DNA of 64,000 bases, taken from positions 124,001 through 188,000 of IMG/VR virus record IMGVR_UViG_3300010158_000027; one strand, 5' to 3'. A program made the translations under genes and the position numbers. The notes beneath the pieces are model-generated. The model searched no databases. It saw only the letters and a program-made list of their open reading frames with translations, and was not told the DNA's origin. Positions 1,964-62,927 of this stretch are shown here, in pieces (position 1 is the first letter of the stretch; each line of letters begins with the position of its first letter).

Positions 1964-1985
1964 AAAGATATTTTTAATATAAATA

Positions 1986-4853
1986 TCATCTACCTTTAAA
2001 AATGATATTTAACATCTCTTCAATGGATGATGCGTCATCCATGATATCGTCTCCCATGACTGTCGATATAATCTTTTTCTTTCTATTTAAGATGTCATAG
2101 ATTAACCCTTCTATTGTGTTTTCAAACAGGGGATAATAAACTGATGTTGAATTTTTTTGTCCGATTCTATGTGACCGATCTTCCGCCTGAGCATGTTCTG
2201 CGGGAACAAATGATAAGTCATTCATTATTACCGCTTCAGCCGAAGTTAAAGTTATACCAACCCCAGCAGCCTTTAAGTTCCCAACAAAAACTTTAATTTT
2301 ATCGTTTTCCTGAAAGTCGTCCACCGATTTTTGTCGATGATGTTTGGAACAACTACCATCCAAATAAACCGCTTGTTTTTCAAAATGATTGTAAATTTCA
2401 TGTAAAGTATCGGTAAAGTTTGTAAAAATTATAACTTTTTTTCCTTGTTCGAGTATGTTTTCAGCCAACTCGATGGTTGTTTTAACTTTTTCTTGTGCGA
2501 TAACTTTTCTTACCTTCATTATTTTACTGAACTGTATTGTTAGTGAATTCGATTCGTCACCGCTCTTATCATACCAATCAAAATATTCACCCATCAACTC
2601 TTCGTAATTATCTGATTTCAATCTTAAATAGACAGGGGTGATAATTTTTTCGGGTAAATCTAAAACGTCGTCCTTTAATCTTCGTAAAATATGTGTTTGG
2701 GTTCTATCTCTTAATTCATCTAAATTCGACGCCCCCGCCACGTTCCAAACTTTTCTACTACCAACATTAAATTGGAATCCATTACAGTATCTTCTAGCAT
2801 ACGACATCCAATTTGCCGCCACGGGACTTTCAACCAAACTCAAAAGATTATAATAGTTCATCGGTCGTGATGTCATTGGTGTTCCCGTTAATAACCAAAC
2901 CCTTTCAATGGATACCGCAATATCGTTTACGATTTTTGTTCGGGCAGCTTGGGGGTTTGATATCATGTGAGATTCGTCCATAATAACCAAATCGAATTTG
3001 GACTTTAAAATTGTCGATTCCTCTCTTTTTTTTACGTCGTGGAAATTTTTTAAGATATCATAATTAATAATGACAAAATCATGTTCATCTGAATATTTTT
3101 TACCCTCCGATATATACACACTTCTGTCGGTGTAGTTTTCGATTTCTCTTTGCCAATTTATTTTTAAAGATGCTGGACAAACAATTAATATTTTTTTTGC
3201 TCCCGTTTCTAACGCCGCAATAATTGTCGATGTTGTATTGTGGGTTACAATACAATGTTCGGTAACATATAGTTTATCAGGAGAATCTACCGATATGCAA
3301 ACACTTTCTTCAAATCCAACTTTTTCAATATTTTTAATATATCTTCCAGTTGGGTATTTTTTTGGTTCGATATATCTATCGGACTTTCTTTTTAATCTGA
3401 AGGGATTCATACCTGAAGGTAGTTTAATATTAACTCTATATGCTAATTTACCTTCCATTTTAATCCCTTTATATATGTATGTGGGGATACGAGTATTAAC
3501 TCTGGCAACACCCCCTAATGTTTGTACCACTTCAACAACGTCATCACAAAGTTGTTTTGAAATGGTACAATATTCAGTCCCTAAAAAAGTTTCATTTCCG
3601 TTAAACATACAGTGTCCGTCAGTATCCATTAATCCTTGTAGAATTGCCAATCTATTTTCAATTGATGAATATTTGTATATATCAGGTATGAATTTGTTAT
3701 GGGATCGAGCCTCGTTAAGTTTGAGTTCGTTTAATATATCCCTACCAATAAATTTATTTCCTTTTCTTTTATTGTCAATTTTTTTATTTTCATTTAAATT
3801 AAAACCGTAAAATAATTCATCATAATCGTCGCAGTGAACTGTAAAAACACAAGACGATTTAGTTATATGACCATCTCCCAAAATCAGACCTAAAAAATAA
3901 GGGTTAATCGGAAGGGTATCATTTCGTTCAAACTGTATCGGTTTAACTATCGGTATTTGCCATTTATTATTACCATTTGACGATTTATAGTGGGTTTCTA
4001 TCTCATAATCTTTAGTTGAGTTAACTCCATTACCTTTTATTATAATTTTACCCCCCTCAAACATTTGTTTGGTGGATAGTACTAATGATTTTTTTGTCCT
4101 ATCGTTTTTTCGATTACTACCATAATTTGGGGACGATACCGACCATAAATGTTCATCCCCTGATAAAATTGAAAATCCGTCATTGAATGTAATTTTATAT
4201 GTTTCCTTTAAACCTTGTGGAAATACACCAACAACGTTATACGATTTGCCGTCACTACCAATAACGTTATCTCCGACTTTTAAATCCCCAATTTTTTTTC
4301 TACCATTTGGAGTAAATACCTTATTATTCTTAGGCTCGCACTTGCCCAAACCCATATCGTCCGCCAAAATAAACTTTTTGTTACCAACCAATTTTTGAAT
4401 TGCCTCTTTTTGGTGTTCCATTGGGGGTCTCACATCGTATTTTGTGTAATCGACAACAACGTTTTTTACTTCGTTGTTTTTAATTATTGCCGTTTTCGGT
4501 AACCAAAAATCATGAATGGTTTCACCACTAAACACTTTTCCCCAAATATGATACGACTTATCTTTTTCAACCAAAAGTTTTTCAACGTAAATTTCTGTTG
4601 GTTCTTTGGTATACATTTTATCCTCCATCATCTTTTTACCGAAGTAGGAATCTAACTTAACCCATTTTTTTGCAACTTTTGGTAATATGTTATGGAAATT
4701 TATTATGTAATCTGATTGGGGTCTTGTGGGTGTAAACGACTTACTATTAAGTTTCTTATGTTTTAAATTTAGGATATAGTTATTTGATCCAACATATTCA
4801 TCTAAAAGTTGAAGTGCTTTAGTTTCGGGAGTCCTTGAAATTATGTCGTCCAT
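1986..4853 (-). CDS. SNF2-family helicase/ATPase containing an intein
   Basis: After splicing: Walker A LADDMGLGK|TT, DESH box, LLTGTP motif III, and C-terminal AAGVGITL and QAEDRSHRIGQ motifs. Confidence 0.92.
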   Translation of the reverse strand: MDDIISRTPETKALQLLDEYVGSNNYILNLKHKKLNSKSFTPTRPQSDYIINFHNILPKVAKKWVKLDSYFGKKMMEDKMYTKEPTEIYVEKLLVEKDKSYHIWGKVFSGETIHDFWLPKTAIIKNNEVKNVVVDYTKYDVRPPMEHQKEAIQKLVGNKKFILADDMGLGKCEPKNNKVFTPNGRKKIGDLKVGDNVIGSDGKSYNVVGVFPQGLKETYKITFNDGFSILSGDEHLWSVSSPNYGSNRKNDRTKKSLVLSTKQMFEGGKIIIKGNGVNSTKDYEIETHYKSSNGNNKWQIPIVKPIQFERNDTLPINPYFLGLILGDGHITKSSCVFTVHCDDYDELFYGFNLNENKKIDNKRKGNKFIGRDILNELKLNEARSHNKFIPDIYKYSSIENRLAILQGLMDTDGHCMFNGNETFLGTEYCTISKQLCDDVVEVVQTLGGVARVNTRIPTYIYKGIKMEGKLAYRVNIKLPSGMNPFRLKRKSDRYIEPKKYPTGRYIKNIEKVGFEESVCISVDSPDKLYVTEHCIVTHNTTSTIIAALETGAKKILIVCPASLKINWQREIENYTDRSVYISEGKKYSDEHDFVIINYDILKNFHDVKKREESTILKSKFDLVIMDESHMISNPQAARTKIVNDIAVSIERVWLLTGTPMTSRPMNYYNLLSLVESPVAANWMSYARRYCNGFQFNVGSRKVWNVAGASNLDELRDRTQTHILRRLKDDVLDLPEKIITPVYLRLKSDNYEELMGEYFDWYDKSGDESNSLTIQFSKIMKVRKVIAQEKVKTTIELAENILEQGKKVIIFTNFTDTLHEIYNHFEKQAVYLDGSCSKHHRQKSVDDFQENDKIKVFVGNLKAAGVGITLTSAEAVIMNDLSFVPAEHAQAEDRSHRIGQKNSTSVYYPLFENTIEGLIYDILNRKKKIISTVMGDDIMDDASSIEEMLNIIFKGR
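3237..4340 (-). mobile_element. intein (368 aa) with LAGLIDADG homing endonuclease, inserted in Walker A of the SNF2 helicase
   Basis: Begins with Cys (GLGK|CEPK), ends VTHN, and the +1 residue is Thr. Two LAGLIDADG-type motifs (PYFLGLILGDG, LQGLMDTDG). Removal restores GLGKTT. Confidence 0.95.
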
Positions 4854-4899
4854 AGTATTAAATTAATAGTAGTAAATAATAATAAATAATCAATCAAAG

Positions 4900-4906
4900 T
4901 ATTTAT
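4900..4906 (+). promoter_or_regulatory. TATTTAT promoter-like motif (divergent copy on minus strand at 4882-4888)
   Basis: Lies 4 nt before the ATG at 4911; the same heptamer recurs upstream of about 15 other genes. Confidence 0.6.
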
Positions 4907-4910
4907 TATT

Positions 4911-5426: not shown

Positions 5427-5427
5427 A

Positions 5428-6468: not shown

Positions 6469-6618
6469 TTACTCACCATAAATATCTTTTTCTTTAATAC
6501 AACTCTTCTTAATTAAGTTTTCTAAAAACACATAAATCTTCAATCCATTATCTTGGCAATACGTTTTTAAGATGTTGTGGGTTTCTTCTGAAATCTTTAT
6601 ATTTTTTATTTTTTTCAT
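6469..6618 (-). CDS. 49-aa ribbon-helix-helix DNA-binding protein (not in ORF track)
   Basis: Translation MKKIKNIKISEETHNILKTYCQDNGLKIYVFLENLIKKSCIKEKDIYGE has an alternating beta-ribbon (KNIKIS) plus two helices. It fills the gap exactly, with TATTTAT 4 nt upstream. Confidence 0.75.
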   Translation of the reverse strand: MKKIKNIKISEETHNILKTYCQDNGLKIYVFLENLIKKSCIKEKDIYGE

Positions 6619-6630
6619 ATTTATAAATAT
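6617..6630. promoter_or_regulatory. 14-bp palindrome ATATTTATAAATAT carrying the TATTTAT motif on both strands
   Basis: Perfect palindrome overlapping the RHH start, in the divergent RHH/sheath intergenic region. Confidence 0.55.
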
Positions 6631-6753
6631 AATAAGGTAGAAAAAAGGTAGAATTTTTTCATACTTACATATATTTATTATCTTTTAATCACGTTTTTTG
6701 GAAATTTTGTAGGTATTTATTAATAAAAATAAATCTTTAATTAAATAGACAAA

Positions 6754-9700
6754 ATGGCATCTACTACAAAAGTATTCGTTTCTCCTGGAGTGTATACCTC
6801 AGAAAGAGACTTAACTTTCGTTGCACAAAGCGTTGGTGTAACAACATTAGGTTTGGCTGGGGAGACTTTACAAGGTCCAGCATTCGAACCGATTTTCATA
6901 ACAAACTACGATGAGTATCAAGTATACTTCGGAGGTACAAGTCCCGAAAAATACTACAATACTCAGATACCAAAGTATGAGACGTCTTACATTGCTAAAG
7001 CGTACTTACAACAATCAAATCAATTATTTATAACGAGAGTTTTAGGACTTTCAGGTTATGATGCTGGACCATCTTGGTCGATTGTAACTGCAGGTAACGT
7101 TGATCCGGCAACTCTTTCGGTAACGGCAACTACAGGGCCTGTTTATGTGAACTTTACTGGTACTACAGGTGCTAGTTCAAATATCACTATAACAAGTGTA
7201 CCTTCAGCATTAAGTTCAAAATTTTATGAGACTTACACTAGTTACGACGGTGGAACATCTACATTGAGTCAAGACTTTAAAAATTATATATCAGCTCAAG
7301 TTGGGTTATATAGTACATCATCAGCATTATCAGGAAGAACCGCATATTTTTGGGGTTCAGTTAGTTCAACCACATTTAACTCAGTTACTGGTTCATCAGT
7401 TGCAGGGGCGGCGACAGCATACACTGAAACATTTGGGGTTAATAACGTTAACGTTTCAATCGCAGATTTAAGTTCATCATCAAATGATGCATGGTATTAT
7501 GGATTATTTGATTACAGTCAAAGTATTACTAATGTGAATTCATATAATGGTTATGGGTTTGGTTCGGTTTTAAGTAGTATCACAGGTTTAACTAATGGTG
7601 TTTACTCAGGTACAATGAAAACATACATAACTAACTACTCAGGTTCACCTTATAGTGAATATGATAATCTTGTTGTTGCGACTTTAAGATCTAGAGGTAT
7701 CACTAATTATTCAAGTACAAGTCACGGACCGGCTTTCCAAGTCACAGGAACCACTGATGTGGCAATCAATTGTGCTGGTGGATATTCTGCGGTAACTAAA
7801 AACCCATACGAAACATTCGCAATCTCAGGGATTACTAAAGACGGAGACACATTTAGTTTTGAGACATCATTGTCAACAACAGATACACAATACATTTCTA
7901 AAGTATTTGGTAGAAGTAATTTTGGTAAAGATAGAACTGAAGTTCCTTTACTTGTTGAAGAAACGTACTCAAGTTTGTTACAATCGGGGTATAGAGAAAG
8001 TAAAGTTAGAGGAATTTATTGTGATTTAGTATCTTTACCTGGTGTGACTGACACAACAAGTAATGACTATTCTGATTCATTAGGATTCTATTTGGAACAA
8101 TACCAAACACCTGAAACACCTTATTTAGTTTCAGAACTAAGAGGTAATAAAGTTTTTAAATTATTTAAATTTAAATTAATTTCTGACGGTAACGCGGCAA
8201 ATAAATTGGTAAAAATGTCTATTGGTAATATTTCATTCGCCAATGGAACTTTCGACGTATTCATTAGAGATTTTTATGATAACGACCAAAACGTTAGAGT
8301 TATTGAAAGTTTCACTAATTGTTCTATGGATCCTAACCAAAACAATTATGTAGCAAATAAAATAGGAACATCTAACGGAGAATACCAAGTTAAGTCTAAA
8401 TACGTTATGTTAGAAATGAGTGACGAAGCTCCGACAGACGCATTACCTTGTGGTTTTGATGGTTACATCAGTAGAGAGTATGCAAATGCGACTCCACCGT
8501 TTATGGTTTATAAAACACAATATTTAAAAGCGGGTGATGTAATTTATAACCCACCTTTTGGTTCTTCATCAGGAGGGGATAATGCAGTTATCTCTAACGG
8601 AGAAAACCCAAGAAGAGCCTATTTAGGTATTTCAAACATAACTGGAATTGATTATGATTTCTTCGAATATAAAGGTAAACAAATACCTGCAAACTTAGGA
8701 ACTGACACTTCAGGGATTGGTTGGGGTTATAAAACTAAAGGATTCCACATGGATAGTGGAGCGACTATTGTTACTATGGTTGTTAATTCAGCAACAACGG
8801 AAGCATTTGTAGTTGGTGCTGGAGCATTTAGAAGTGAACCTGAAAACTCCGATAACCCATATTACAAATCAAATACACGTAAATTTACATTATATCCTTA
8901 CGGTGGATTCGATGGTTGGGATATCTATAGAGAATATAGAACTAATGGTGATTCATTCGCGTTGGGTCAATCAGGATTCAAATATGGTGCGGCACCTTCA
9001 GTGACATATCCAACAGCATCAGGATGGGGAGCATTTAAACAAATTTCAGGTCCTAATCAAGAGACATGGGCAAACACTGACTATTACGCATTTAAAATGG
9101 GACAAAGCAGTTTCGCAAATCCTGAGTCGGTTAATATTAACGTATTTGCAACTCCAGGTATTGATTACGTAAATAACTCAAACTTAGTTGAAGATGCGAT
9201 TGATATGGTTGAAACTGACAGAGCTGATTCAATTTACATCTGTACGACTCCTGATTTTAATTTATTTTTACCAACTTATTCTGATATTGAAGAAGGATTG
9301 ATTTATCCACAAGAAACGGTAGATAATTTGGAATCTACGGGTATAGACTCTAACTACTCAGCAACTTACTACCCATGGGTTTTGACAAGAGATAGTGTAA
9401 ATAATACACAACTTTATTTACCACCAACAGGTGAAGTGGTTAAAAACTTGGCATTAACTGATAACATCGCCTTCCCTTGGTTCGCATCTGCGGGTTACAC
9501 AAGAGGTTTGGTAAATTCTATCAGAGCACGTAAAAAGTTGACACAAGAAGATAGAGATACCTTATATAAAGGTAGAATAAACCCAATCGCTACTTTCTCT
9601 GATGTTGGTACGGTAATTTGGGGTAACAAAACGATGCAAGTTAAGGAATCTGCACTTGACAGAATTAACGTTAGAAGATTGTTACTACAAGCTCGTAAAT

Positions 9701-9969
9701 TAATTTCAGCGGTGGCAGTTAGATTATTGTTTGAGCAAAATGACGATAAAGTTAGACAACAATTCTTAGACTCAGTTAACCCAATCTTGGATTCAATTAG
9801 AAGAGATAGAGGTTTGATTGATTTTAGAGTAACGGTTTCAAACACACCTGAAGATTTAGACTCAAACACTTTAACGGGTAAAATTTATTTAAAACCTACA
9901 AGAGCGTTAGAATACATTGACATCGAGTTTGTTATCACACCAACAGGAGCATCGTTTGACGATTTATAA
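6754..9969 (+). CDS. contractile tail sheath protein
   Basis: 1071 aa. N-terminal FVSPGVYTSERDL; C-terminal FPWFASAGYTRG, GTVIWGNKT, LDRINVRRLL and IYLKPTRALEYI sheath motifs. Confidence 0.95.
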   Translation: MASTTKVFVSPGVYTSERDLTFVAQSVGVTTLGLAGETLQGPAFEPIFITNYDEYQVYFGGTSPEKYYNTQIPKYETSYIAKAYLQQSNQLFITRVLGLSGYDAGPSWSIVTAGNVDPATLSVTATTGPVYVNFTGTTGASSNITITSVPSALSSKFYETYTSYDGGTSTLSQDFKNYISAQVGLYSTSSALSGRTAYFWGSVSSTTFNSVTGSSVAGAATAYTETFGVNNVNVSIADLSSSSNDAWYYGLFDYSQSITNVNSYNGYGFGSVLSSITGLTNGVYSGTMKTYITNYSGSPYSEYDNLVVATLRSRGITNYSSTSHGPAFQVTGTTDVAINCAGGYSAVTKNPYETFAISGITKDGDTFSFETSLSTTDTQYISKVFGRSNFGKDRTEVPLLVEETYSSLLQSGYRESKVRGIYCDLVSLPGVTDTTSNDYSDSLGFYLEQYQTPETPYLVSELRGNKVFKLFKFKLISDGNAANKLVKMSIGNISFANGTFDVFIRDFYDNDQNVRVIESFTNCSMDPNQNNYVANKIGTSNGEYQVKSKYVMLEMSDEAPTDALPCGFDGYISREYANATPPFMVYKTQYLKAGDVIYNPPFGSSSGGDNAVISNGENPRRAYLGISNITGIDYDFFEYKGKQIPANLGTDTSGIGWGYKTKGFHMDSGATIVTMVVNSATTEAFVVGAGAFRSEPENSDNPYYKSNTRKFTLYPYGGFDGWDIYREYRTNGDSFALGQSGFKYGAAPSVTYPTASGWGAFKQISGPNQETWANTDYYAFKMGQSSFANPESVNINVFATPGIDYVNNSNLVEDAIDMVETDRADSIYICTTPDFNLFLPTYSDIEEGLIYPQETVDNLESTGIDSNYSATYYPWVLTRDSVNNTQLYLPPTGEVVKNLALTDNIAFPWFASAGYTRGLVNSIRARKKLTQEDRDTLYKGRINPIATFSDVGTVIWGNKTMQVKESALDRINVRRLLLQARKLISAVAVRLLFEQNDDKVRQQFLDSVNPILDSIRRDRGLIDFRVTVSNTPEDLDSNTLTGKIYLKPTRALEYIDIEFVITPTGASFDDL

Positions 9970-10040: not shown

Positions 10041-10178
10041 ATGATAATAGAAAAAAAATTAATCAAAGAAAGTGTTGGTATCGATAAGAAAGAGTCACAA
10101 ACTTTTTCAGATAAAAAACAAAATATTGTTATTACTGAAGCTCAATTAGAAAAACTATTGGAAAAACTTAAGAAGTGA
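10041..10178 (+). CDS. 45-aa protein (not in ORF track)
   Basis: Translation MIIEKKLIKESVGIDKKESQTFSDKKQNIVITEAQLEKLLEKLKK. TATTTAT at 10020-10026; its stop overlaps the next ATG (TGATG). Confidence 0.7.
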   Translation: MIIEKKLIKESVGIDKKESQTFSDKKQNIVITEAQLEKLLEKLKK

Positions 10179-11077: not shown

Positions 11078-11190
11078 TAATCTCTAGTCTAGTAGAATAA
11101 TAATTTTTAACCGGGACAAAGTAAATAGAAAAAAAATAAACAAGGTGATATTTATAATAAAATAAATAAAACTAATAAAAAAAATAGACA

Positions 11191-11679
11191 ATGGCTGATT
11201 TATTAATGAAAATGCCCTTTCAGTACGAACCTAAAAAAAGTAATAGGTTTATATTGAGTTTCCCTTCTTCTTTAGGGATCAATTCTTGGTATGTTGAAAA
11301 AGCATCTAGGCCAAGTATAAAAATAGATACGAAAGAGATCAAATTCTTAAATACTCAAACGTATGTTGCAGGAGCGTTCAACTGGGAATCGATTTCAGTA
11401 ACTCTAAGAGATCCTATCGGTCCTTCGGCATCTCAAGCAGTTATGGAATGGGTTCGTTTACATGCTGAGTCTGTAACAGGACGTATGGGTTATGCTGCTG
11501 GTTATAAAAAAGACGTGGATTTAGAAATGTTGGATCCTACAGGTGTTGCCGTTGAAAAGTGGATATTACAAGGTTGTAGTATTACCGACGTTAAATTTAA
11601 CAGTGTTGGGTATGATTCATCAGATATTATGAAAATCGATATGACATTACAACCTGATCGTTGTATACTAGTATACTAA
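11191..11679 (+). CDS. tail tube protein (gp19-like)
   Basis: 162 aa, EPK..NRF and W..I.VTLRDPI..ASQAVMEW..YKKD..LEMLDPTG..VEKW.LQG motifs; follows the sheath. Confidence 0.88.
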   Translation: MADLLMKMPFQYEPKKSNRFILSFPSSLGINSWYVEKASRPSIKIDTKEIKFLNTQTYVAGAFNWESISVTLRDPIGPSASQAVMEWVRLHAESVTGRMGYAAGYKKDVDLEMLDPTGVAVEKWILQGCSITDVKFNSVGYDSSDIMKIDMTLQPDRCILVY

Positions 11680-12661: not shown

Positions 12662-12692
12662 AAATAACCTATTTATTAAATAAAATAAGAGT

Positions 12693-14651
12693 ATGTTTTT
12701 ATTTCAAACGACACCAACTGGTGATGAATTTACTGACGGGTTTAAGTTATATACTGAGGGTATAAAAAAAGTGTGGGAGGGGTTAGGCGCGTCACTAATA
12801 CCTGAAAACAATATTGAAATCCTAACCTCAATGGAGTCAAAGGCAAAATCCATTCAAAGAGCTATCTCCGGAGTGGCCCTTAACCCGGCTAGTGCCACGG
12901 CATTTAGAGGAAAAATTGAAGATATTTATTTTGGTGTTGTCGGATTAAATGATGGGATAGTACAAATTGGTGGTACCGTTAAGGATATTACCGATGGTAT
13001 GCAGGCTATGAGTGACACTTTAGGTCGAGTAATCTCTCCATCATCTACGGTTTTAACTAAGATGGTCGAAATGTCAAAAGCCACAGGTATTGGTACTTTG
13101 GAATTGGGGAAAATGACTGCCGAATTTATGAGACTTACTTTTTCACAAGAGAAAAGTATGAAACTAATAAATACTATAAGTGAAGCTGCGAGAAGAAGTG
13201 GGTTAAATGTGAAAGGGGTTTTAGCTGAGGTACAAGCTAATCTTTCTAAAGTAAATGCGTATAGTTTTAAAGGTGGTGTTGAGGGATTAACCAAAATGGT
13301 TTTAGAAGCGAAAAGATTAGGGGGGACAATTGAGGATATTGGAGCTGCGAGTCTTGGTAGAAGTTTCGCATTTGACCCTGAAAAGGCTATTGAAGCGGCA
13401 TCATCGATGTCAATGCTTGGTGGGTCTATGAGTGATCTTATGAATCCGTTCCAATTAATGAATATGGGAGCAAACAATGTGGGTAAACTACAAAGTAATT
13501 TACTTGAAATGTCTAAGTCGGCATTTAAAGTTAACGAAGCCACCGGTGAAATTGAATCAAATGCCATTGCTCAACAAAGATTATATGAACAATTAAAGGC
13601 TTTCGGTAAAGAGGGTGAATACGATAAGTTCATTAATATGGGTCGTGAGAGTGCAAAACAAGCCATGATAGTTAAAAAGGTTAGTGACAGTGGTTTAGGT
13701 AAACTTTTTGGTGAAGGAAAAATGTTTGACGAAAAAGAACAAGGGTTAATTTCTCAATTGGCTGAGGTCGGTAAGGATGGAAAAATATCTTTAGAACTTC
13801 CTGGAATGGAAAAGATTCAAGACTTAACCGCAACATTAGCTAGCCCCAAAGGTCCTAAAGAATTAGAAAAAGCATTAATAGAGTACCAAAGACAAGCATC
13901 AATGAGTGATAAGGACATTGCAATAAAAAATTTAACCACTGTTGAGCAACAGTTAGTTGTTCAAAAAACTATAGAACAAGCAATCTTAAGACAATACACA
14001 TCAACGGAAAGAACAAAGATATTAAAAGACGTGGAAACGTCGTTAAATGCTAATCGAGAGATCGCTGAGAAAATGAGTGGACTTATGGCTCCTTCCGCGA
14101 AAGCCGCAATTGCCGCCATACCCGCAACCTCGGCAGGTATCACCACCGCTTTTAATGATAAAATGGGAGGGGCTAATGCGTATTTACGAGAAAAATATCT
14201 TAAGAAAGAATCGGAGGAGAGCGAAACAGTTGTTAAGGATGGTTTTTTCGATGGAGAAAATAAATCACTAAGAATGGGTAAAGGTGAAATATTTAATTTT
14301 ATAAAAGAGGATCAAGCAATTTTTGCCCCCGATTTAAATGGGAAATTAGGTATTTTAAAGGAAGCGTATCTTAAAATGCAAGATTTCACATCAGGACTTA
14401 ATAGTATGGCACCAAAAGAGTTACCAACTGTAAGATTACCAAAAACCGAATCAACACAAAAAACTGAAGTTACGGAGACTAAAGTACAAAAAATAGAAGG
14501 ATCTGGGACTGTAAACATTAATGTTAATATAACAAGTAGTGGTAATTTGGCTGACACACTTATTAATGATAGACGATTTAAAAATGATTTGGAAAAAGAA
14601 ATCCTATATGTTATTAAAAACAAGGATGTATTAATGGTGAAAAAACCATAA
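12693..14651 (+). CDS. tape measure protein
   Basis: 652 aa, helical and A/G/K/E-rich, located right after the chaperone pair. Confidence 0.7.
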   Translation: MFLFQTTPTGDEFTDGFKLYTEGIKKVWEGLGASLIPENNIEILTSMESKAKSIQRAISGVALNPASATAFRGKIEDIYFGVVGLNDGIVQIGGTVKDITDGMQAMSDTLGRVISPSSTVLTKMVEMSKATGIGTLELGKMTAEFMRLTFSQEKSMKLINTISEAARRSGLNVKGVLAEVQANLSKVNAYSFKGGVEGLTKMVLEAKRLGGTIEDIGAASLGRSFAFDPEKAIEAASSMSMLGGSMSDLMNPFQLMNMGANNVGKLQSNLLEMSKSAFKVNEATGEIESNAIAQQRLYEQLKAFGKEGEYDKFINMGRESAKQAMIVKKVSDSGLGKLFGEGKMFDEKEQGLISQLAEVGKDGKISLELPGMEKIQDLTATLASPKGPKELEKALIEYQRQASMSDKDIAIKNLTTVEQQLVVQKTIEQAILRQYTSTERTKILKDVETSLNANREIAEKMSGLMAPSAKAAIAAIPATSAGITTAFNDKMGGANAYLREKYLKKESEESETVVKDGFFDGENKSLRMGKGEIFNFIKEDQAIFAPDLNGKLGILKEAYLKMQDFTSGLNSMAPKELPTVRLPKTESTQKTEVTETKVQKIEGSGTVNINVNITSSGNLADTLINDRRFKNDLEKEILYVIKNKDVLMVKKP

Positions 14652-14680
14652 TAAAATCTATTTATATATAAAATTAATAA

Positions 14681-17600
14681 ATGGAGAGCCCATTATCATT
14701 TGATTCTACTGAAAACTTTAGAAAAAAACTATTGCTTAAAAATTTAAAACCTTATAAGGTTGATGGTTTTTACGCTAGTAATGACGGTAGTGTAAATACT
14801 GAAATCGTTTTAATCGATTATTCAGTAATAGATGAACAAACTGTCGATGTGACTGCGAAACAAATAGAACCAAGACTTATTGGATTAAATAAGTATACAC
14901 CTATAGGTGGAACGTTTGGAGATTTAGTTTCTATAAATTTAAACTTAAATTCTCAAACTAATTTTGGTAATTATAGTTACATTCAGTCTGAAGGATCAAA
15001 ACTTGAAAGTTTTGGTAGACAAAAAGAGGTTGAATCAATTGTCCAAAACCAATACGGACCTGAGGGCCAACAAAGTAAAACAACGGTTACCCCCAATTTA
15101 AATTTCCAAAATAAACCAAATGAGGGTAACTACGGATATCCTGATAGTGTTGGTAGTGAAATAGAATTGGAGGGTGATAAACAAGAGAAGTTATCAAGAG
15201 TATTAAACAAGTACTCACCGAGTAACATACAGAACGGATACGGAGACTCTGTACTGTTTCCGTTATTAGTTATTGGATCAAACCAAGGAGACTACCTATA
15301 CGTCTCTAATGGACCAAATTTAACAACGTCACAATCGCAAGATAGTGCGTATGTTACAAACCTTTACGGACCAAACGGTGGATTTGATTCTCCCGTTAAC
15401 ATTGGTTTAACTTATCAAACACAATCAAATAAGGGTGAATATAGTTTTGGGGTTTCAGCACCAAATAGAACAACGGAACAATCACAAAAAGTTTCATATA
15501 TTGCAAACATATTTGGACCTGAAAACCAACCGAATGGTTTTGGTGATATGATAAATCCTAATTTAGATTACCAAACATATTCAAACCAAGGTGAGTTTAA
15601 TTATGAAACTTCGTCACCTAGTAAAACTACCGAACAGTCACAATCCTTTTTATATACAAAAAATAGGTATAATAATGGTGATGGTACGTATGAGGTTTTA
15701 AGTGTTGAAGATTTAGCTTTTGAAAATATTAATGCGCCGTATTATAGTAGTAAAACTACTTTTGTGTTTTTACCTTCTGACTATACCCCGTTTAGTATAT
15801 TAAGTAATAATGATATTAATGGTATTGTTGGTAGTGAAGGTTCTTTAAGTCAAGATTCTGATTTGGCAAAATTAGGAGCAAAACAATTGCAAAAAGAATT
15901 TAAAGCAAGATTAGCATTTGAATTATTACAACAAACCTTAGGTAGAACCATATTAACTAATTCATCAATTGATCCTAACAGTGGGGGGGTTTCGGTAAAA
16001 CCGAATTTAGATCCTTTCGATGCGTTAGGTGTGGTTATGAATAAAATACCATTATTACAAAAAGACTTTAGAATTACATCTATTGGTGGTGGTATATTGG
16101 GGGAAACCCTGTCGTTCACATCTAGGTTATCTGGTCTTTATTCTCCTTATTCGTTAATACCTGGTTCATACTTTGACTACCCTAGTAAAAATTTATTATC
16201 ACAAGTTACAAGTAACCCTATTGGTGCCGTTGCTGGTATAGTTACGAATTTAGCAACAAAAATATTAAGCGCAAATATAGACACAGGTTCTGAAAGATTA
16301 TTGGCAAACACATCAAGTGCGACTAGAAGTCTATTATTTGATTTGTTATGGTATAACCAATACCGACCTAAATACAGATTAGATTCTGGGTTTAGCCCTA
16401 ATCTAATCGCCCCTGGAGGTAATTTTTATGTTGGTAAAACTAAAAATTATTTAAGAGATTTGGTTAGTCCCGTAACGGACTTACCAAAGGATAGAAACGG
16501 TAACCCATCAATTGGTCCTGTTTATGATTATGGTAGGGTAGGTAGAGATTTTGAAGGTACTAAGGTTAATGAAAAATTATTTGGTTTAAATGCCAGGCCG
16601 TTCTATGATAAGCTGGGAGGTATACAGGGGGGATTTACTTGGTCAGCTAAAAAGAATTATTTGGATCCGGGTAGGTTTGTTGGACTTAAAAACGAAAAGG
16701 GTGAGGATGTTCCAGGTCAAATTAGTAAGGTTTTTGAAAACGGAATTAAAGACTCTTTTAACAAAACAAAATCCTCTGATATTGAATTAACTCCAGGATC
16801 GATTTTAGATGTTACTCAAAAGTTGGTGGACGCTGGAAGTTTGGCATTAAATAAATTAGAGCACGTTGGTAATGCCATCAATCAAATATCTAAAGTCTTT
16901 AATGATGGGTATATTGAAACAACGAAGGGTTCTAGGGTTAGGAGGTATCTAACTCCGACAGCCGCGGGACAAATTAAAGGAAGTGAGGTTAAAACAGTTG
17001 TTGGGTATGAATATGCGAGACTATTCACCAAAGACAGACCGTATTATTCGTTCGACGAACTACAAAAAAAAGATGGTAATATTAGAAAATATAGTAGTTC
17101 CGTTTTTGACAATACATATAATTTAAATATAGCACCTACCGTAGGTGTTGATTCTACCAACATACAGTTAAATAGTCAAGGTAAGATGGGCGCTAAAAAA
17201 TATATGTTCTCTATTGAAAATTTGGCATGGAGAACATCTAGTAGAGTTGGATATAGAGTTGAGGATTTACCTGCGAGCGAGATAGGACCTAACGGTGGTA
17301 GAGTTATGTGGTTTCCACCGTATGACTTATCTTTTGACGATAACACGCAGACAAATTGGCAGGATAATGTTTTTTTAGGTAGAACAGAACCTGTGTACAC
17401 GTTTACTAATTCAAAAAGGTCGGGAACTATTAAGTTTAAAATTGTTGTCGATCATCCATCTGTGATGAATATTTTAGTGAAAAAAGAATTAGAGAAATCT
17501 GACGAATCTGAAGCGACAAAAGTGATTGATTCGTTATTTGCTGGATGTTTAAAATACGACCTCGTGGACTTACTTAAAAAGTTTCCGATGTTTAGTTATA

Positions 17601-19754: not shown

Positions 19755-20072
19755 ATGGAATATTACAGAAGATATGATAAGTTTTTAATTAATGGTTTAC
19801 AAACTGTTGTACCTTATGTTAGTATTGGTAATCGTCCATCGGATCAAAAATACGTATATAGAGAAAACCAAAGTAGGTTGGATAAAATCAGTTATGAAAA
19901 GTATGGTAGCCCATATTTTGGTTGGTTAATTTTAAATGCAAACCCAATTTATGGGGGACTTGAAACGAATATTCCTGATGGAACGATTTTAATTATACCA
20001 TATCCGTTATTAAGTGCTTTGCAAGACTACAAAAATGCGGTAGATACCTATATTTTTTATTATGGCAGATAA
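19755..20072 (+). CDS. LysM/tail-X-like baseplate protein (gp53-like)
   Basis: YVYRENQSRLDKISYEKYGSPYFGWLILNANP..IPDGT.LIIP motif. Confidence 0.75.
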   Translation: MEYYRRYDKFLINGLQTVVPYVSIGNRPSDQKYVYRENQSRLDKISYEKYGSPYFGWLILNANPIYGGLETNIPDGTILIIPYPLLSALQDYKNAVDTYIFYYGR

Positions 20073-26499: not shown

Positions 26500-26548
26500 T
26501 AATTTAAATTTTTCACACTATCGGTATATTTATATATAAAATAAAGTT

Positions 26549-29499: not shown

Positions 29500-29548
29500 T
29501 AAAATATAAATAATTATACTTTTTAGTTATTTGGTGATATTTATTAAT

Positions 29549-31953: not shown

Positions 31954-31988
31954 TATTTATTAAAACACAATAAAAAAATCTATAAAAT

Positions 31989-35570: not shown

Positions 35571-35617
35571 TTTTACCGCTATTTATAACAAAAGTTACAA
35601 CATTATATTTATATAAT

Positions 35618-37922: not shown

Positions 37923-37994
37923 AATTATTTATTTTGGTGTAAAGATGATTATTATTAAAAATACCAAAATAACTATTTATCAACAAAGGGAAGT

Positions 37995-47968: not shown

Positions 47969-48002
47969 AAGCTCAATAAACTCTATTTATAAATAAAAAA
48001 GA

Positions 48003-55714: not shown

Positions 55715-55798
55715 CGACGTAAACTAAAATATTCGTAAATTTTAATTATTACTACCCTTTTTGTTGGATTTACGTTATTTTTTGAATAAAAATTAAAC

Positions 55799-57843: not shown

Positions 57844-57895
57844 ATACTTCAATAAAATAAAGTTTTGATTATTTATATATAAAGTTTAAACTTTA

Positions 57896-59521
57896 ATGGC
57901 AAATTTATTATTCCAGGGTTGTTGTTACGATGGTTATCAGTATGTTACTAATGATGGTGATTGGGTTGCGACGGGAGGTACCGCGACGGTAGGTTTAACC
58001 TATCATTTTTCTGGTGATCCTGTTGTACCTAATGGTTGTTATACTATTGTCTCATCATTCGTTGCTGGGTTTAGTTCAGAAACATTTACACAATTAACGG
58101 GAACATACACTCTACAAACCGATTGTTCTGACACTCTATGTATGACGGCAAATTGTTGTTCAAACATTGTGTGTGTTAGCATACCATTAGATGCGTATTC
58201 GGGACTTAATGGTAATTATACGGTATCGGGTGGATTTAATGGATATCCCTATTGGACGGGAGGAACTAGTGGAGGAACCATCTATTTTAATTCAACGAGA
58301 TGGTGTCTTTCAACAGGACTAAATCAAAGTTGTTTATTTTATGGGTCTAACCCAACGTTATATGAATGTCCTGATTTAGATACTAGTATTGTTTATAGTG
58401 GTGTTTGTGTACCAACACCAACACCATATGACCCATGTTCTATTTTAGATTTTGATATATTGACCGAATGTTTGATACCGACACCTACGCCGACACCCAC
58501 GGCAACGGCAACACCCACTCCGACACCAACACCTACCCCAACACCTGATCCGTGTTTAGGGTACTCAGTTGATATTAGTTTTAGTGCAACAACACCGACA
58601 CCAACGGCAACACCATCACCAACGGCAACACCAACACCTACGTTCGCTTACTCAATTAATTCGGGGGTAACCTTTGTGATTGATAGTGGTAATTTTAATT
58701 GTGTGGATGTTAAAGTGTTAACTGATTGTAATAGTAGTGAGATTTATTACGTTTCTGGTCCTCTAGTTTATTCTGGTGGAGTCATTAGTTCAGGAACAAC
58801 ATTTTTTGGTATTATAAATGGTGATTATAAGTGTTTAACATATACTGAGGATAATGCGGGAAGTCCTGGAGACTTATTAACCTCGATTATATCGACGGGA
58901 AGTAGTTGTTCTACTTGTGTGGTAATAACGCCAACACCAGCACCTACGTTGACCCCTACCGCCACTCCAACACCGACGCCAACATCCACTCCAACACCAA
59001 CATACGCACCTAATACTCAATTTGTGTTTACGTCTTGTACTAATAATTCGATGATAATACAAAATATGACACCACCTTCGAATGTTAATATAGGGTTGGT
59101 AGTTAAAGACTTGTCGGGTAATTGTTATAGTTATGTTGGGAATTATGTTGCTTATGTTCCACCTGCAGGATATATATGGTCAAATATTAACGCCTTTACT
59201 GCCGCTACTGCAACGACATATAGTACTTGTATTTCTTGTTTAACTCCTTCACCAACACCAGGACCCGCTTACCGTACTTGGAACGCGAAAGGTGAGTTTA
59301 CGGTTTCATGTCCGACATGTGAATTAGTAAATGGGGGAGCCGACATGACTTTCTATAGTTCATCTGCAGATACGATATTACAAACGGGGGTATATATTTA
59401 TGAAGACACTACTTTAGTTACTCCTGTAATAACGAGTTATGTTAAATATTCAAATAAAATTTATTCAGTAGATTTAAATGGTAAAATTACTGAATTTTGC
59501 ACATTAAACGGTAATTGTTAA
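57896..59521 (+). CDS. Cys-rich modular appendage protein with multiple Pro-Thr tracts
   Basis: 541 aa; PT tracts at about 58411, 58478-58546, 58585-58642, 58927-59010 and 59243. Confidence 0.8.
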   Translation: MANLLFQGCCYDGYQYVTNDGDWVATGGTATVGLTYHFSGDPVVPNGCYTIVSSFVAGFSSETFTQLTGTYTLQTDCSDTLCMTANCCSNIVCVSIPLDAYSGLNGNYTVSGGFNGYPYWTGGTSGGTIYFNSTRWCLSTGLNQSCLFYGSNPTLYECPDLDTSIVYSGVCVPTPTPYDPCSILDFDILTECLIPTPTPTPTATATPTPTPTPTPTPDPCLGYSVDISFSATTPTPTATPSPTATPTPTFAYSINSGVTFVIDSGNFNCVDVKVLTDCNSSEIYYVSGPLVYSGGVISSGTTFFGIINGDYKCLTYTEDNAGSPGDLLTSIISTGSSCSTCVVITPTPAPTLTPTATPTPTPTSTPTPTYAPNTQFVFTSCTNNSMIIQNMTPPSNVNIGLVVKDLSGNCYSYVGNYVAYVPPAGYIWSNINAFTAATATTYSTCISCLTPSPTPGPAYRTWNAKGEFTVSCPTCELVNGGADMTFYSSSADTILQTGVYIYEDTTLVTPVITSYVKYSNKIYSVDLNGKITEFCTLNGNC

Positions 59522-59526
59522 ATAAT

Positions 59527-59814: not shown

Positions 59815-59834
59815 AAGACTATATAAAAAATAAA

Positions 59835-61139: not shown

Positions 61140-61141
61140 TC

Positions 61142-61300: not shown

Positions 61301-61301
61301 A

Positions 61302-62915
61302 ATGGGACAATTTAGTGGAAATACATGTAATATTATAACACTCTTCCCAATGGGGGTTGAATGTTCGGCAGTGAATTCATCTTCGCCGTATAATAATGAT
61401 GGTGCAATTTATTTGACAATTACTGGAGGAACACCACCTTATAAGATTTCATGGAATAATGGTTCTCAGACACAATACTTAACGGGTTTACAATTTGGAA
61501 CGTATACTGCTAATATAACGGATTATTATGGTGATTTTAGTGCAACAACAACTTGTATCGTGAGTACTAATTATGCTGCAATTTTAGAGGAGTTTTTTAA
61601 TTGTACCAACCCAACAGAAAAGATATATTACGTAGCAAACATTAACTCTTTATACCCAAGTAATGGTGTGTTCACTTTAACATCACAATCAGGATGTTGG
61701 GTTAGTGCAGGTATTATTACAAATACGGGACAAACGTTTTACAATTATAGTGCAATAACCACTTCAGGACCATTTGTGGACTGTGATGACTGTTTACCTA
61801 CAACGCCAGAAATAGAAAGTATATCAGGTATGTGTTTAACTACCGTTAAGTCAGTTTTTGGTGTACCATCGTCAACACAATACCAATTTTATTCTGCTGA
61901 TACAATGAACGGATACCCTACGTGGGTTTCAACATCACCTGACCAAAAAATTTATTTTAATACTATGACAAGTCAATGGAAAGTTTCTGGTTGGACATTA
62001 AGCGGTATACCGTCGTTAGGATTAAATGTTTCTCCACCTTTGGGGGTATGGACAGTGGATGGTAGTCCTCGAACTGTTAACGTAAGTGCTGGTAATTGTG
62101 ATGATAAAATTGTTGTGAGACTACGAACGACTGACCCATCATGTAACGTAGCGTCTGACGGACTTATTCAGGTTGGTGGGGTTATTGGTGGAACGGCACC
62201 ATATACGTATTCATTGGATAACATTGTGTACCAAACATCGATTATGTTTAATAATTTACCAGTTGGGAGTTATACTGTTTATGTGAAGGATATTATTGGC
62301 AATATCGGAACGGCGATAGCGGTATTGACGGGAATAAGTACAATAACAACATATCAGATAAATTTATCTCTTATTAGTACTCAAACGTTAAACACAACAA
62401 ACTACGCTCAAAAAATATATAATTGGGGTATTAACGTGACACCACCATTACCAGCAAACCGATCGGTGTCGTTTACGTTATATGATACTACATCAATGTC
62501 TGCGGGTACCGCATCTAACGGATCACCCGTTTTGACATATTCTAACACAACTGGTACGACAGGGACAAGTCAGTTTGTTACGTCAACATTGACAACAACA
62601 ACAAATAGTTATACGAACATACTTTGTCACCCTAATTATTATACAACAGGCATCACTCGAACGTATAATGTTAGTATATCGGGTACAGGTGTTGTTGGTG
62701 GTCAGATATTACAAAAAGTACAAGTCGTTAATAATGGGGTAAAGTGTACGACTACTGGATCAATAAAGGATACGTTATCTATTGGTAATGTCGTTTTAAA
62801 TAATCAACAAGTGTGTGAACAAATAAGTCCTTCAGTAACGCCAATTACCGTTGTTGTTGGAATGTCCGGAACCATAGCTTCCATAACCATAGGCACAGGT
62901 AGTGCATCGATGTAA
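61302..62915 (+). CDS. fibre/appendage protein with SprB-like repeats and Cys module
   Basis: ITGGTPPYKISWNNG..TGLQFGTY and GGTAPYTYSLD..FNNLPVGSYTVYVKD. Confidence 0.78.
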   Translation: MGQFSGNTCNIITLFPMGVECSAVNSSSPYNNDGAIYLTITGGTPPYKISWNNGSQTQYLTGLQFGTYTANITDYYGDFSATTTCIVSTNYAAILEEFFNCTNPTEKIYYVANINSLYPSNGVFTLTSQSGCWVSAGIITNTGQTFYNYSAITTSGPFVDCDDCLPTTPEIESISGMCLTTVKSVFGVPSSTQYQFYSADTMNGYPTWVSTSPDQKIYFNTMTSQWKVSGWTLSGIPSLGLNVSPPLGVWTVDGSPRTVNVSAGNCDDKIVVRLRTTDPSCNVASDGLIQVGGVIGGTAPYTYSLDNIVYQTSIMFNNLPVGSYTVYVKDIIGNIGTAIAVLTGISTITTYQINLSLISTQTLNTTNYAQKIYNWGINVTPPLPANRSVSFTLYDTTSMSAGTASNGSPVLTYSNTTGTTGTSQFVTSTLTTTTNSYTNILCHPNYYTTGITRTYNVSISGTGVVGGQILQKVQVVNNGVKCTTTGSIKDTLSIGNVVLNNQQVCEQISPSVTPITVVVGMSGTIASITIGTGSASM

Positions 62916-62927
62916 TATTTATAAAAT

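What the first reader, a model, noticed from the sequence alone, without database searches (positions are those of the whole stretch)
1979..62922. Genome-wide TATTTAT motif upstream of genes: the reverse complement of the T4 late promoter, often almost leaderless
Seen: TATTTAT lies in sense orientation in nearly every intergenic gap. Plus strand: 4900, 6672, 6714, 10020, 11149, 12670, 14659, 26527, 29538, 31954, 35580, 35606, 37926, 37974, 47984, 57870, 62916. Minus strand: 1979-1985, 4882-4888, 6623-6629. In five cases it is only 4-5 nt from the ATG (4911, 6618, 29549, 35618, 62928). Known: the T4 gp55 late promoter is TATAAATA, whose reverse complement is TATTTATA. Inference: this is the promoter for a phage-specific sigma/RNAP. 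The 4-5-nt spacing implies initiation within or just after the motif and leaderless or very short-leader mRNAs.
Basis: partly seen in the sequence, partly recalled or inferred. Interest (0 to 1): 0.65.

Follow-up and report, generated by a model that had tools for sequence, protein, structure and literature searches.

The report
Phage late promoter TATTTAT, partly leaderless
A strictly conserved seven-letter signal, TATTTAT, in front of about a third of the genes of a 281-kb freshwater T4-like phage is most likely the promoter read by the phage's own gp55-like sigma factor, and it often sits so close to the start codon that the messenger RNA would have no leader.

Summary
All 20 listed sites exist. 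TATTTAT is 38 times denser in the window's intergenic DNA than in coding DNA. Genome-wide it is the top upstream heptamer: 93 sense copies against 16.7±3.9 in dinucleotide shuffles. Orientation is 104 sense against 20. One-mismatch variants are not enriched.

The distance to the ATG peaks at 4-6 nt, 12-17 nt and about 28-38 nt. The sites are conserved in relatives down to 33% protein identity, and in the cultured T4-like Flavobacterium phage immuto.

The window lies in a 281-kb T4-like jumbo phage (gp23 capsid, gp18 sheath) from lakes, with Bacteroidota-style signals: no Shine-Dalgarno sequences, and host-type TAnnTTTG boxes before other genes. No RNA polymerase gene was detected. It has two sigma genes: an RpoD-like one, and a 248-aa remote gp55 relative with a sigma-2 fold. 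Immuto has only the second, which makes it the likelier reader.

A leaderless start is inferred from geometry only. The host box at -12 to -5 shows the same 4-nt spacing, and one 27-bp divergent spacer holds two promoters. No transcription start data could be obtained.

The "reverse complement of T4" relation is true as a string but probably not mechanistic: in the sense orientation the motif differs from TATAAATA at two positions. This is a new variant of a known kind.

The parts
4900..4906 (+). TATTTAT, 4 nt before the ATG at 4911 (171-aa ORF); short, 'leaderless' class
   Evidence: Conserved with the same spacing in L006, L007 and L011.
4882..4888 (-). TATTTAT on the minus strand, 28 nt before the SNF2 helicase gene (1986-4853). 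It shares a 57-bp divergent spacer with site 4900.
1979..1985 (-). TATTTAT on the minus strand, 15 nt before the 372-aa ORF 845-1963 (weak head-tail adaptor match)
6618..6629 (.). Palindrome made of two overlapping copies. The minus-strand copy (6623-6629) lies 4 nt before the ATG of the 49-aa ORF 6469-6618. The plus-strand copy (6618-6624) lies 129 nt before the sheath gene.
6672..6678 (+). Second upstream copy, 75 nt before the sheath gene; kept only in the close relatives
6714..6720 (+). TATTTAT 33 nt before the tail sheath gene (6754-9969); A-rich leader
   Evidence: Same site and spacing (32-34 nt) in L006, L007, L009 and L011. Same motif before the sheath gene of phage immuto.
10020..10026 (+). 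TATTTAT 14 nt before the 45-aa ORF 10041-10178, just after a terminator-like hairpin
11149..11155 (+). TATTTAT 35 nt before the 162-aa ORF 11191-11679. This ORF has the place and size of a tail tube gene; that was not tested.
   Evidence: kept in 8 of 8 relatives, 31-36 nt.
12670..12676 (+). TATTTAT 16 nt before the 652-aa ORF 12693-14651
   Evidence: An alignment of the upstream regions shows the heptamer in the window and all seven relatives, L006-L012. The ORF-based count, which needs a called ATG-started ORF of 50 aa or more, recovered it at 14-16 nt in L005 (a 100%-identical contig of the window's own sequence), L006, L009, L011 and L012.
14659..14665 (+). TATTTAT 15 nt before the 1690-aa ORF 14681-19753
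26527..26533 (+). TATTTAT 15 nt before the 74-aa ORF 26549-26773
29538..29544 (+). TATTTAT 4 nt before the ATG at 29549 (54-aa ORF); short class
31954..31960 (+). TATTTAT 28 nt before the 457-aa ORF 31989-33362
35580..35586 (+). TATTTAT 31 nt before the ATG at 35618; first of a tandem pair
35606..35612 (+). TATTTAT 5 nt before the ATG at 35618 (153-aa ORF that heads the baseplate-J operon); short class
37926..37932 (+). TATTTAT 62 nt before the 2104-aa ORF
37974..37980 (+). TATTTAT 14 nt before the 2104-aa ORF 37995-44309
47984..47995 (.). Palindromic pair. The plus-strand copy lies 12 nt before the 302-aa ORF 48003-48911.
57870..57876 (+). TATTTAT 19 nt before the 541-aa ORF 57896-59521
62916..62922 (+). 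TATTTAT 5 nt before the ATG at 62928 (729-aa ORF that runs out of the window); short class

Best explanation
TATTTAT(A/T) is the -10-type core of a phage-specific promoter class in a T4-like jumbo phage of a Bacteroidota (flavobacterium-like) host. It appears to be the late class, though not only that.

Host RNA polymerase would be redirected to it by a phage-encoded sigma. The likeliest reader is the 248-aa remote relative of T4 gp55, encoded outside the window at genome 89843-90589 on the minus strand.

Transcription would start at an A about 4-5 nt after the heptamer (T then A, positions +10 and +11 or +12 from the motif start). Where that A belongs to the ATG, which is about 30% of sites, the mRNA is leaderless. 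Elsewhere it carries a short A-rich leader of about 8-13 or 24-34 nt without a Shine-Dalgarno sequence.

Shown here: enrichment, orientation, strictness, spacing classes, conservation, absence of a detectable phage RNA polymerase gene, and presence and fold of the sigma. Inferred: which sigma reads the motif, the exact start site, leaderless translation and timing.
For: Statistics.

No -35 element; only a weak A/T tract at -17 to -14.

Spacing peaks at 4-6, 12-17 and 28-38 nt. The 4-6, 13-15 and 33-35 nt peaks are reproduced in 80 related loci, with density 4.64 per kb intergenic against 0.35 per kb coding.

AAA sits at +11 to +13 in 26-30 of 31 long-class sites, the same place as the A of the ATG in the short class. 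T precedes the ATG in 24 of 26.

Orthologous sites are perfectly kept while the flanks change, in relatives down to 33% identity.

The cultured T4-like Flavobacterium phage immuto has the same motif before its sheath, tube, hub, tape-measure and tail-fibre genes (12 of 32 genes).

27 of 52 directions in divergent spacers carry the motif. These include a 27-bp spacer filled by one TATTTAT and one host box, each 4 nt from its ATG.

No RNA polymerase gene was detected. The capsid is gp23-like and the sheath gp18-like.

Sigma evidence:
- phrog_234 (late sigma), E 0.03.
- PF04542, E 0.002.
- The family profile hits SigA region 2 at E 0.0026 and T4 gp55 at E 0.14 in the PDB.
- 18 of 81 family members hit phrog_234.
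- The AlphaFold model has pLDDT 91. Its structural neighbours are almost all sigma factors at Z 9-11; residues 22-124 superpose on sigma domain 2 at rmsd 2.6-3.0.
- hhalign to T4 gp55 gives E 1.6e-4.

Immuto carries this sigma (E 1.6e-35, annotated hypothetical) but no canonical sigma-70 gene.

Motif-led genes include the sheath, the baseplate-J operon, a tail fibre and the endolysin.
Against: No transcription start data. The only RNA libraries holding the phage are assembled contigs, which cannot show 5' ends.

Homology of the sigma to gp55 is remote (hhalign probability 50%). The protein has an extra C-terminal domain that gp55 lacks.

Neither a gp45-type clamp (PF02916) nor a gp33 relative was detected.

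The jumbo clade also keeps an RpoD-like sigma.

With T4's own geometry (box at -13 to -6; PMC1524935), a start would fall inside the ATG of the short class. The geometry must therefore differ from T4 by 1-2 nt.

The motif also precedes non-structural genes (SNF2 helicase, a transposase, small ORFs), so 'late' is not established.
Confidence: 0.72

Rival explanations
1. The heptamer is read by a canonical sigma-70-family protein. This would be either the host primary sigma-A, treating it as a variant of its -7 box TAnnTTTG, or the phage's own RpoD-like sigma (genome 201764-202582). The gp55-like protein would do something else.
For: TATTTATW matches TAnnTTTG at 4 of its 6 specified positions when the first letters are aligned, and it sits at the same distance from leaderless ATGs (box position from PMC9723704). 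The RpoD-like sigma is a full region 1.2/2/4 protein. It is kept in the three most complete relatives and lies just behind a TATTTAT-led gene, as an autoregulated sigma would.
Against: The two motifs are kept sharply apart. One-mismatch variants of TATTTAT are not enriched. The G of the host box is absent, and no -33 or -35 partner is seen. Phage immuto uses the same motif but has no PF04542 match at E up to 1. Host-type boxes were seen before small unknown genes in regions that lack TATTTAT; this was judged by eye, not counted.
Confidence: 0.18
2. The element acts at the RNA level, as UAUUUAU. It would be an AU-rich endonuclease processing site or a translation-initiation enhancer in a host without Shine-Dalgarno pairing, and not a promoter.
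For: It is sense-oriented and tied in distance to the start codon. The leaders are A/U-rich and lack a Shine-Dalgarno sequence, as in Bacteroidota (PMC9723704).
Against: It fills divergent spacers where transcripts must begin: 27 of 52 directions, including spacers of 26-57 bp with no room for another promoter. It occurs at three separate distance classes up to 38 nt, conserved per gene. The AAA or ATG at a fixed +11 to +13 fits a start site. A sigma gene co-occurs with it.
Confidence: 0.06
3. Compositional artefact: an A/T-rich word that is common simply because the spacers are 18-26% GC.
For: The spacers are very A/T-rich. The complementary word is also mildly enriched: 49 copies against 26±5.
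Against: Dinucleotide-preserving shuffles of the same spacers give 5.6 times fewer copies, about 19 standard deviations below the observed count. A/T-only one-mismatch variants are enriched at most 3.4-fold, against 10.3-fold for the motif. Orientation is 104 to 20, the spacing peaks are sharp, and the sites are conserved across diverged relatives.
Confidence: 0.01

Closest known systems
T4 late promoter TATAAATA with gp55, gp33 and gp45 (Straboviridae; variants such as CTAAATA in Aeromonas phage Aeh1)
   Same: A single, short, very strict A/T-rich -10-type box without a -35 element (PMC1524935). The phage is T4-like (gp23 capsid, gp18 sheath) and encodes a remote gp55 relative. The box precedes structural genes. 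There is precedent for a diverged box going with a diverged gp55 (Aeh1; PMC1524935).
   Different: The sense-strand word is TATTTATW, not TATAAATA; positions 4 and 5 are T, not A. The inferred start lies 4-5 nt after the heptamer, 1-2 nt closer than in T4. The sigma is 248 aa with an extra C-terminal helical domain. No gp33 or gp45 relative was detected. About 30% of sites are placed for leaderless mRNAs.
Bacteroidota primary sigma-A promoters: -7 box TAnnTTTG at -12 to -5, plus -33 TTTG
   Same: Same position relative to the presumed start, and the same 4-nt spacing to leaderless ATGs in this very genome (PMC9723704). TA and two of the three T's are shared. No Shine-Dalgarno sequence follows.
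   Different: A replaces T at box position 6, and A/T replaces the conserved G at position 8. No -33 element is seen. The two words are used before different genes.
Leaderless mRNAs (common in Actinobacteria, Deinococcus and archaea; 5.5% of mRNAs in Flavobacterium psychrophilum)
   Same: The -10-type box ends 4-6 nt before the ATG, and there is no ribosome-binding sequence.
   Different: The predicted share is much higher: about 30% of TATTTAT sites, plus 9 host-type boxes, against 5.5% in a flavobacterial host (PMC9723704). The start sites are not mapped.
Promoters of jumbo phages with their own RNA polymerases (phiKZ and AR9 types)
   Same: A jumbo genome with short A/T-rich phage-specific promoter words.
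   Different: No multisubunit or T7-like RNA polymerase gene was detected here. The phage brings sigma factors instead.

Membership tests
T4-type (gp55-dependent) late promoter | 8-bp box TATAAATA on the non-template strand at -13 to -6 | tested here: not met
   The sense-strand word is TATTTAT(A/T): 104 of 104 by selection, with an eighth base A in 65 and T in 35. TATAAATA in the sense orientation is only weakly enriched: 19 copies against 8.2±2.7. The box definition is from PMC1524935.
T4-type (gp55-dependent) late promoter | No -35 element | tested here: met
   The position table of 104 sites shows no conserved upstream word, only an A/T tract at -17 to -14.
T4-type (gp55-dependent) late promoter | The phage encodes a gp55-family sigma | tested here: met
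   At the remote-homology level only: phrog_234 E 0.03; 18 of 81 family members hit phrog_234, best E 7.5e-6; PDB profile hit to gp55 chain 7d7c_F at E 0.14 and to SigA at E 0.0026; hhalign to T4 gp55 at E 1.6e-4, probability 50%; sigma domain-2 fold at Z 9-11.
T4-type (gp55-dependent) late promoter | Co-activator gp33 and sliding clamp gp45 are present and required | tested here: inconclusive
   PF02916 found nothing in the genome. The 121-aa ORF next to the sigma gene has no gp33 match. Divergent versions could be missed, and the requirement itself cannot be tested in silico.
T4-type (gp55-dependent) late promoter | Drives the late (virion, lysis) genes | tested here: inconclusive
   The motif precedes the sheath, the baseplate-J operon, a tail fibre and the endolysin. 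It also precedes an SNF2 helicase, a transposase and many unknown genes. There are no expression data.
Bacteroidota sigma-A promoter | -7 box TAnnTTTG with conserved TTTG | tested here: not met
   The heptamer has A at box position 6 and A/T at position 8, never G. The word TATTTGT, which is part of the host box TATATTTG, is counted apart and is enriched only 3.2-fold.
Bacteroidota sigma-A promoter | -33 TTTG partner about 19-21 bp upstream | tested here: not met
   No such word appears in the position table.
Leaderless mRNA | The primary 5' end coincides with the A of the start codon | not testable with these tools
   Only assembled contigs of metatranscriptomes were available. One contig ends 15 nt after the sheath promoter heptamer, which proves nothing.
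Leaderless mRNA | The -10-type box ends 4-7 nt before the ATG, with no ribosome-binding sequence | tested here: met
   31 of 104 sites lie at 4-6 nt, and 103 of 272 in related loci. Host-type boxes of known position (-12 to -5) show the same 4-nt spacing (PMC9723704).
Promoters of phage-encoded RNA polymerases | The phage encodes its own RNA polymerase | tested here: not met
   PF00562, PF00623 and PF00940 gave no match in a record estimated 96% complete. The control genomes matched the first two families. PF00940 matched no control genome, so its blank is weaker.

The most novel reading that the evidence does not exclude
A large, abundant clade of T4-like phages of Bacteroidota has rebuilt gp55-type late transcription. 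A two-domain gp55 relative (a sigma-2 domain plus an extra C-terminal domain) would read TATTTATW without gp33 or a clamp. About a third of these promoters would fire exactly at the start codon, making leaderless translation a major route for phage expression in a phylum that lacks Shine-Dalgarno pairing.
Probability: 0.3. Interest if true: 0.65.

Novelty: new variant of a known kind. Interest (0 to 1): 0.5.

Why it matters
It gives a concrete, testable promoter word and a candidate sigma for a very abundant but mostly uncultured group of freshwater and marine T4-like phages. The sigma family has about 1,300 clusters at 50% identity. It is annotated 'hypothetical' in the cultured phage immuto.

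It would help annotate transcription units and true start codons in these genomes, including small ORFs. It offers orthogonal promoter and sigma parts for Bacteroidota genetics, where standard tools fail. It also points to a natural system in which leaderless translation can be studied in flavobacteria.

It is a variation on the T4 late-transcription theme, not a new principle.

Tried and rejected
- Megablast of 20 kb of the window against the phage collection found no match.
- T4 gp55 as a single query against the genome found nothing. phrog_12791 also found nothing.
- The first structure model, from 16 near-identical sequences, was poor (pLDDT 59.5), and its fold search was uninformative. 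It was replaced by a model from 81 diverse sequences.
- Foldseek E-values stayed weak (0.06 or worse) because the two domains are arranged differently. Domain-level superposition by VIA-align was needed.
- RNA evidence: only three metatranscriptome runs hold parts of the stretch, and all are assembled contigs. They show no starts, strand or level.
- A full-text search for the heptamer with 'phage' and 'promoter' gave only unrelated papers. A search on phage immuto listed no paper whose title or abstract concerns its promoters; none of them was opened.
- PHROG scans of 20 motif-led proteins left 13 blank, so temporal class could not be assigned from function.
- The gp45 N-terminal family and a gp33-like neighbour were not detected.
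- Contigs of more distant sigma relatives were mostly too short to test for a changed motif. One 13.7-kb contig, whose sigma is 38% identical, still shows TATTTAT before three genes.
- Considered and rejected: a phage RNA polymerase promoter, because no polymerase gene was detected; a compositional artefact, because of the shuffles and variants; and reading the motif as a T4 box on the opposite strand, because that would point away from the genes it is spaced to.

Full report
**What the window is**

The 64-kb window is positions 124001-188000 of a single 281,269-bp viral contig with 33% GC. CheckV estimates it 96% complete.
- It encodes a tail sheath related to T4 gp18, a baseplate-J protein and an SNF2 helicase with an intein.
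- Outside the window it encodes a major capsid protein of the T4 gp23 family (PF07068, E 1e-61).
- Public runs that hold it are lake-water and freshwater-sediment metagenomes.
- There are no Shine-Dalgarno sequences before the genes, and the leaders are A-rich.
- A second class of upstream words, TAnnTTTG, matches the -7 box of the Bacteroidota primary sigma factor (PMC9723704).

The host is therefore most likely a member of Bacteroidota, probably a flavobacterium. This is an inference from the signals and from the cultured relative described below.

**Check of the observation**

The five short spacings are right, including the minus-strand case at 6618. That one belongs to a 49-aa ORF (6469-6618) which a 60-aa cut-off hides. 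Site 10020, which seemed to have no gene, lies 14 nt before a 45-aa ORF.

In the window:
- 25 copies lie in 1,476 intergenic bases and 28 in 62.5 kb of coding sequence.
- Dinucleotide shuffles of those spacers give 6.8±2.5, with a maximum of 15 in 500.

Genome-wide:
- The heptamer is the most enriched of all 7-mers in the 60 nt before 320 ORFs: 93 copies against 16.7±3.9.
- 104 intergenic copies point at the next gene and 20 do not.
- Inside genes there is no strand bias, 83 against 86.
- The word is strict. Its density is 10.3 times the genome's, and no one-mismatch variant exceeds 3.4 times.
- The eighth base is A or T in 100 of 104 sites, and the base before the motif is mostly A or G.
- No -35-like word exists, only an A/T tract at -17 to -14.

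The claim 'nearly every gap' holds roughly for the window but not for the genome. About 30% of genes carry the motif, and long stretches of small genes lack it.

**Anatomy**

The distance from the heptamer to the ATG has three peaks: 4-6 nt (31 sites), 12-17 nt (about 30) and 28-38 nt (about 15).
- In the middle class, positions +11 to +13 from the motif start are A in 26, 30 and 30 of 31 sites.
- In the short class, the A of the ATG falls at +11 or +12 and is preceded by T in 24 of 26 sites.
- One register, heptamer, then 3-4 nt, then T, then A, therefore fits all classes. The pyrimidine-purine step is what a transcription start usually looks like (general knowledge of bacterial start-site preference).

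**Conservation**

Eight viral contigs were found with the 652-aa protein. One of them, L005, is 100% identical and so is the window's own sequence. The seven relatives range from 77% down to 33% identity. They keep the heptamer at the orthologous places with nearly the same spacing: 4 nt before the 171-aa gene, 32-34 nt before the sheath gene, 31-36 nt before the 162-aa gene and 14-16 nt before the 652-aa gene. The bases just upstream change.

Eighty loci around the sigma gene (1.49 Mb) show 4.64 copies per kb in spacers against 0.35 in genes. They show the same peaks at 4-6, 13-15 and 33-35 nt. These loci are orthologous, so this counts as conservation and not as independent replication.

The cultured T4-like Flavobacterium phage vB_FspM_immuto_2-6A (NC_055915) carries the same word, in the same TATTTAT-A/T-A-rich context, before 12 of 32 genes of its structural region. 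These include the sheath, tube, baseplate hub, tape-measure and tail-fibre genes, and one case lies 5 nt from the ATG.

**Promoter rather than RNA signal**

In 26 divergent spacers, where each direction needs its own start, 27 of 52 directions carry TATTTAT and 35 carry it or a host-type box.

The spacer at genome 253781-253807 is only 27 bp long. It consists of 4 nt, the heptamer on the minus strand, 4 nt, a host-type box TACATTTG, and 4 nt, between the two start codons. There is no room for leaders or for other promoters. This argues against a processing or translation signal, and for starts at or next to the ATG.

**Who reads it**

Searches of the genome found no beta-subunit, beta'-subunit or T7-like polymerase domain. 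The first two families matched all 14 control genomes. The T7-like family matched no control genome, so its blank is weaker.

Two sigma genes were found, both outside the window.

1. Genome 201764-202582 encodes a 272-aa protein with sigma-70 regions 1.2, 2 and 4. It resembles SigA, RpoD and RpoS at E 1e-42.

2. Genome 89843-90589 (minus strand) encodes a 248-aa protein with only weak single-sequence hits: phrog_234 'late sigma transcription factor' at E 0.03, PF04542 at E 0.002 and TIGR02937 at E 0.0025.
   - Its family is very large: about 8,000 close sequences and 1,286 clusters at 50% identity with E up to 0.001.
   - A profile of 81 diverse members hits SigA region 2 (E 0.0026) and T4 gp55 (E 0.14) among solved structures.
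   - 18 of the 81 members hit phrog_234 on their own, best E 7.5e-6.
   - hhalign against T4 gp55 aligns the N-terminal 112 columns co-linearly at E 1.6e-4, probability 50%.
   - A model with pLDDT 91 has almost only sigma factors as structural neighbours (Z 8.6-11). Residues 22-124 superpose on sigma domain 2 at rmsd 2.6-3.0 over 93-99 residues.

The 248-aa protein is therefore a sigma factor and a remote gp55 relative. It has an extra C-terminal helical domain that was not resolved separately.

Phage immuto has this family (E 1.6e-35; KNV73_gp118, annotated 'hypothetical protein') but no PF04542 match at E up to 1. The three most complete jumbo relatives keep both sigmas.

Because the motif is shared by phages that share only the gp55-like sigma, I assign the motif to that sigma with moderate confidence. 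A 13.7-kb contig whose sigma is 38% identical also has TATTTAT before three genes, and it shows the same glycosyltransferase-sigma gene order.

**Leaderless question**

In Flavobacterium psychrophilum the sigma-A box lies at -12 to -5, and leaderless mRNAs make up 5.5% of mRNAs (PMC9723704). In this phage, 9 of the 37 host-type boxes lie exactly 4-5 nt before an ATG. That places the A of the ATG at +1.

TATTTAT shows the same 4-5-nt spacing in 26 cases, plus 5 at 6 nt. With T4's geometry (box at -13 to -6; PMC1524935) the start would fall inside the ATG. The register here must therefore be 1-2 nt tighter than in T4.

The sharp spacing to ORF-opening ATGs cannot be chance, so those ATGs must be on the RNA. 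The simplest reading is a start at the A. This remains inference. The only RNA data are assembled contigs from three metatranscriptomes, which show presence but no ends.

**Relation to the T4 box**

TATTTATA is indeed the reverse complement of TATAAATA. However, the motif is oriented with the genes and spaced to their start codons, so it is the sense word that matters. Read in the same direction, it differs from the T4 box at positions 4 and 5 (TT for AA). It differs from the host box TAnnTTTG at positions 6 and 8.

A diverged late box paired with a diverged gp55 has a precedent in Aeromonas phage Aeh1, which uses CTAAATA (PMC1524935).

**Timing and open points**

Genes led by the motif include virion and lysis genes. 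They also include a helicase, a transposase and many unknown genes. Thirteen of the 20 proteins scanned have no PHROG match.

By eye, host-type boxes precede small unknown genes in regions that lack TATTTAT, mainly at 214-281 kb but also at 4, 17 and 54 kb. This has not been counted. It would fit a scheme of early genes on host sigma and later genes on the phage sigma, but there are no expression data.

The role of the RpoD-like sigma is open. Its gene lies behind a TATTTAT-led gene. No gp33 or gp45 relative was found.

**Verdict**

The feature is real, strong and conserved. It is best explained as a phage-specific -10-type promoter read by a gp55-like sigma, with a large leaderless subclass. 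It is a new variant of the T4 late-promoter theme.

I found no report of it in the searched literature, and the sigma is unannotated in the cultured relative. It can be tested directly in the immuto-Flavobacterium system.

Noticed in passing
genome 214-281 kb and scattered sites, e.g. G000 248836, 250299, 252221, 253808, 259364, 4215(-), 17458(-): Host-type Bacteroidota -7 boxes (TAnnTTTG) precede small unknown genes in regions that lack TATTTAT. Nine of the 37 lie exactly 4-5 nt before the ATG, which is the leaderless geometry for a box at -12 to -5.
   Followed up: partly
G000:C1:253781-253807: A 27-bp divergent spacer made only of 4 nt, a minus-strand TATTTAT, 4 nt, the host-type box TACATTTG and 4 nt, between two start codons. 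These are two back-to-back promoters with no room for leaders.
   Followed up: partly
G000:C1:201764-202582 (+), outside the window: A 272-aa RpoD/SigA-like sigma factor (regions 1.2, 2 and 4) sits directly behind a DUF6576 gene whose ATG lies 5 nt after a TATTTAT. It is kept in the three most complete relatives and absent from phage immuto. Its promoter class is unknown.
   Followed up: partly
G000:C1:89456-89821 (-), next to the gp55-like sigma gene: A 121-aa ORF lies immediately downstream of the sigma gene and is led by overlapping TATTTAT copies. An ORF of similar size (132-140 aa) follows the sigma gene in distant relatives (L039-L043). No gp33 or other match was found, so a co-factor role is only a guess.
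   Followed up: partly
window 1986-4853 (-): The SNF2-family helicase is interrupted by Hint and LAGLIDADG domain matches, which suggests an intein with a homing endonuclease.
   Followed up: no
window 6618-6629 and 47984-47995: Twelve-base palindromes made of two overlapping heptamers, one on each strand. At 6618-6629 both directions have an ORF downstream, so this is a possible bidirectional promoter.
   Followed up: partly
G000 583, 6994, 190228, 235514 (+): Four copies of a 15-base word, each followed by a T-run and placed after a gene. It looks like a repeated terminator hairpin.
   Followed up: no
G000:C1:232076-233284 (+): A 402-aa transposase (phrog_506, E 6e-128) inside the phage genome has its ATG 5 nt after a TATTTAT. 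A mobile-element gene appears to be wired to the phage promoter.
   Followed up: no
window 14681-19753, 20062-26499, 37995-44309: Three very large ORFs (1690, 2145 and 2104 aa) lie in the tail and baseplate region. The 1690-aa one has no Pfam match; the other two were not scanned.
   Followed up: no
G000 1-7 kb: A set of small genes has near-identical upstream regions and similar first codons, each led by TATTTAT at 14-17 nt or 5 nt. This looks like a paralogous family near one genome end.
   Followed up: no
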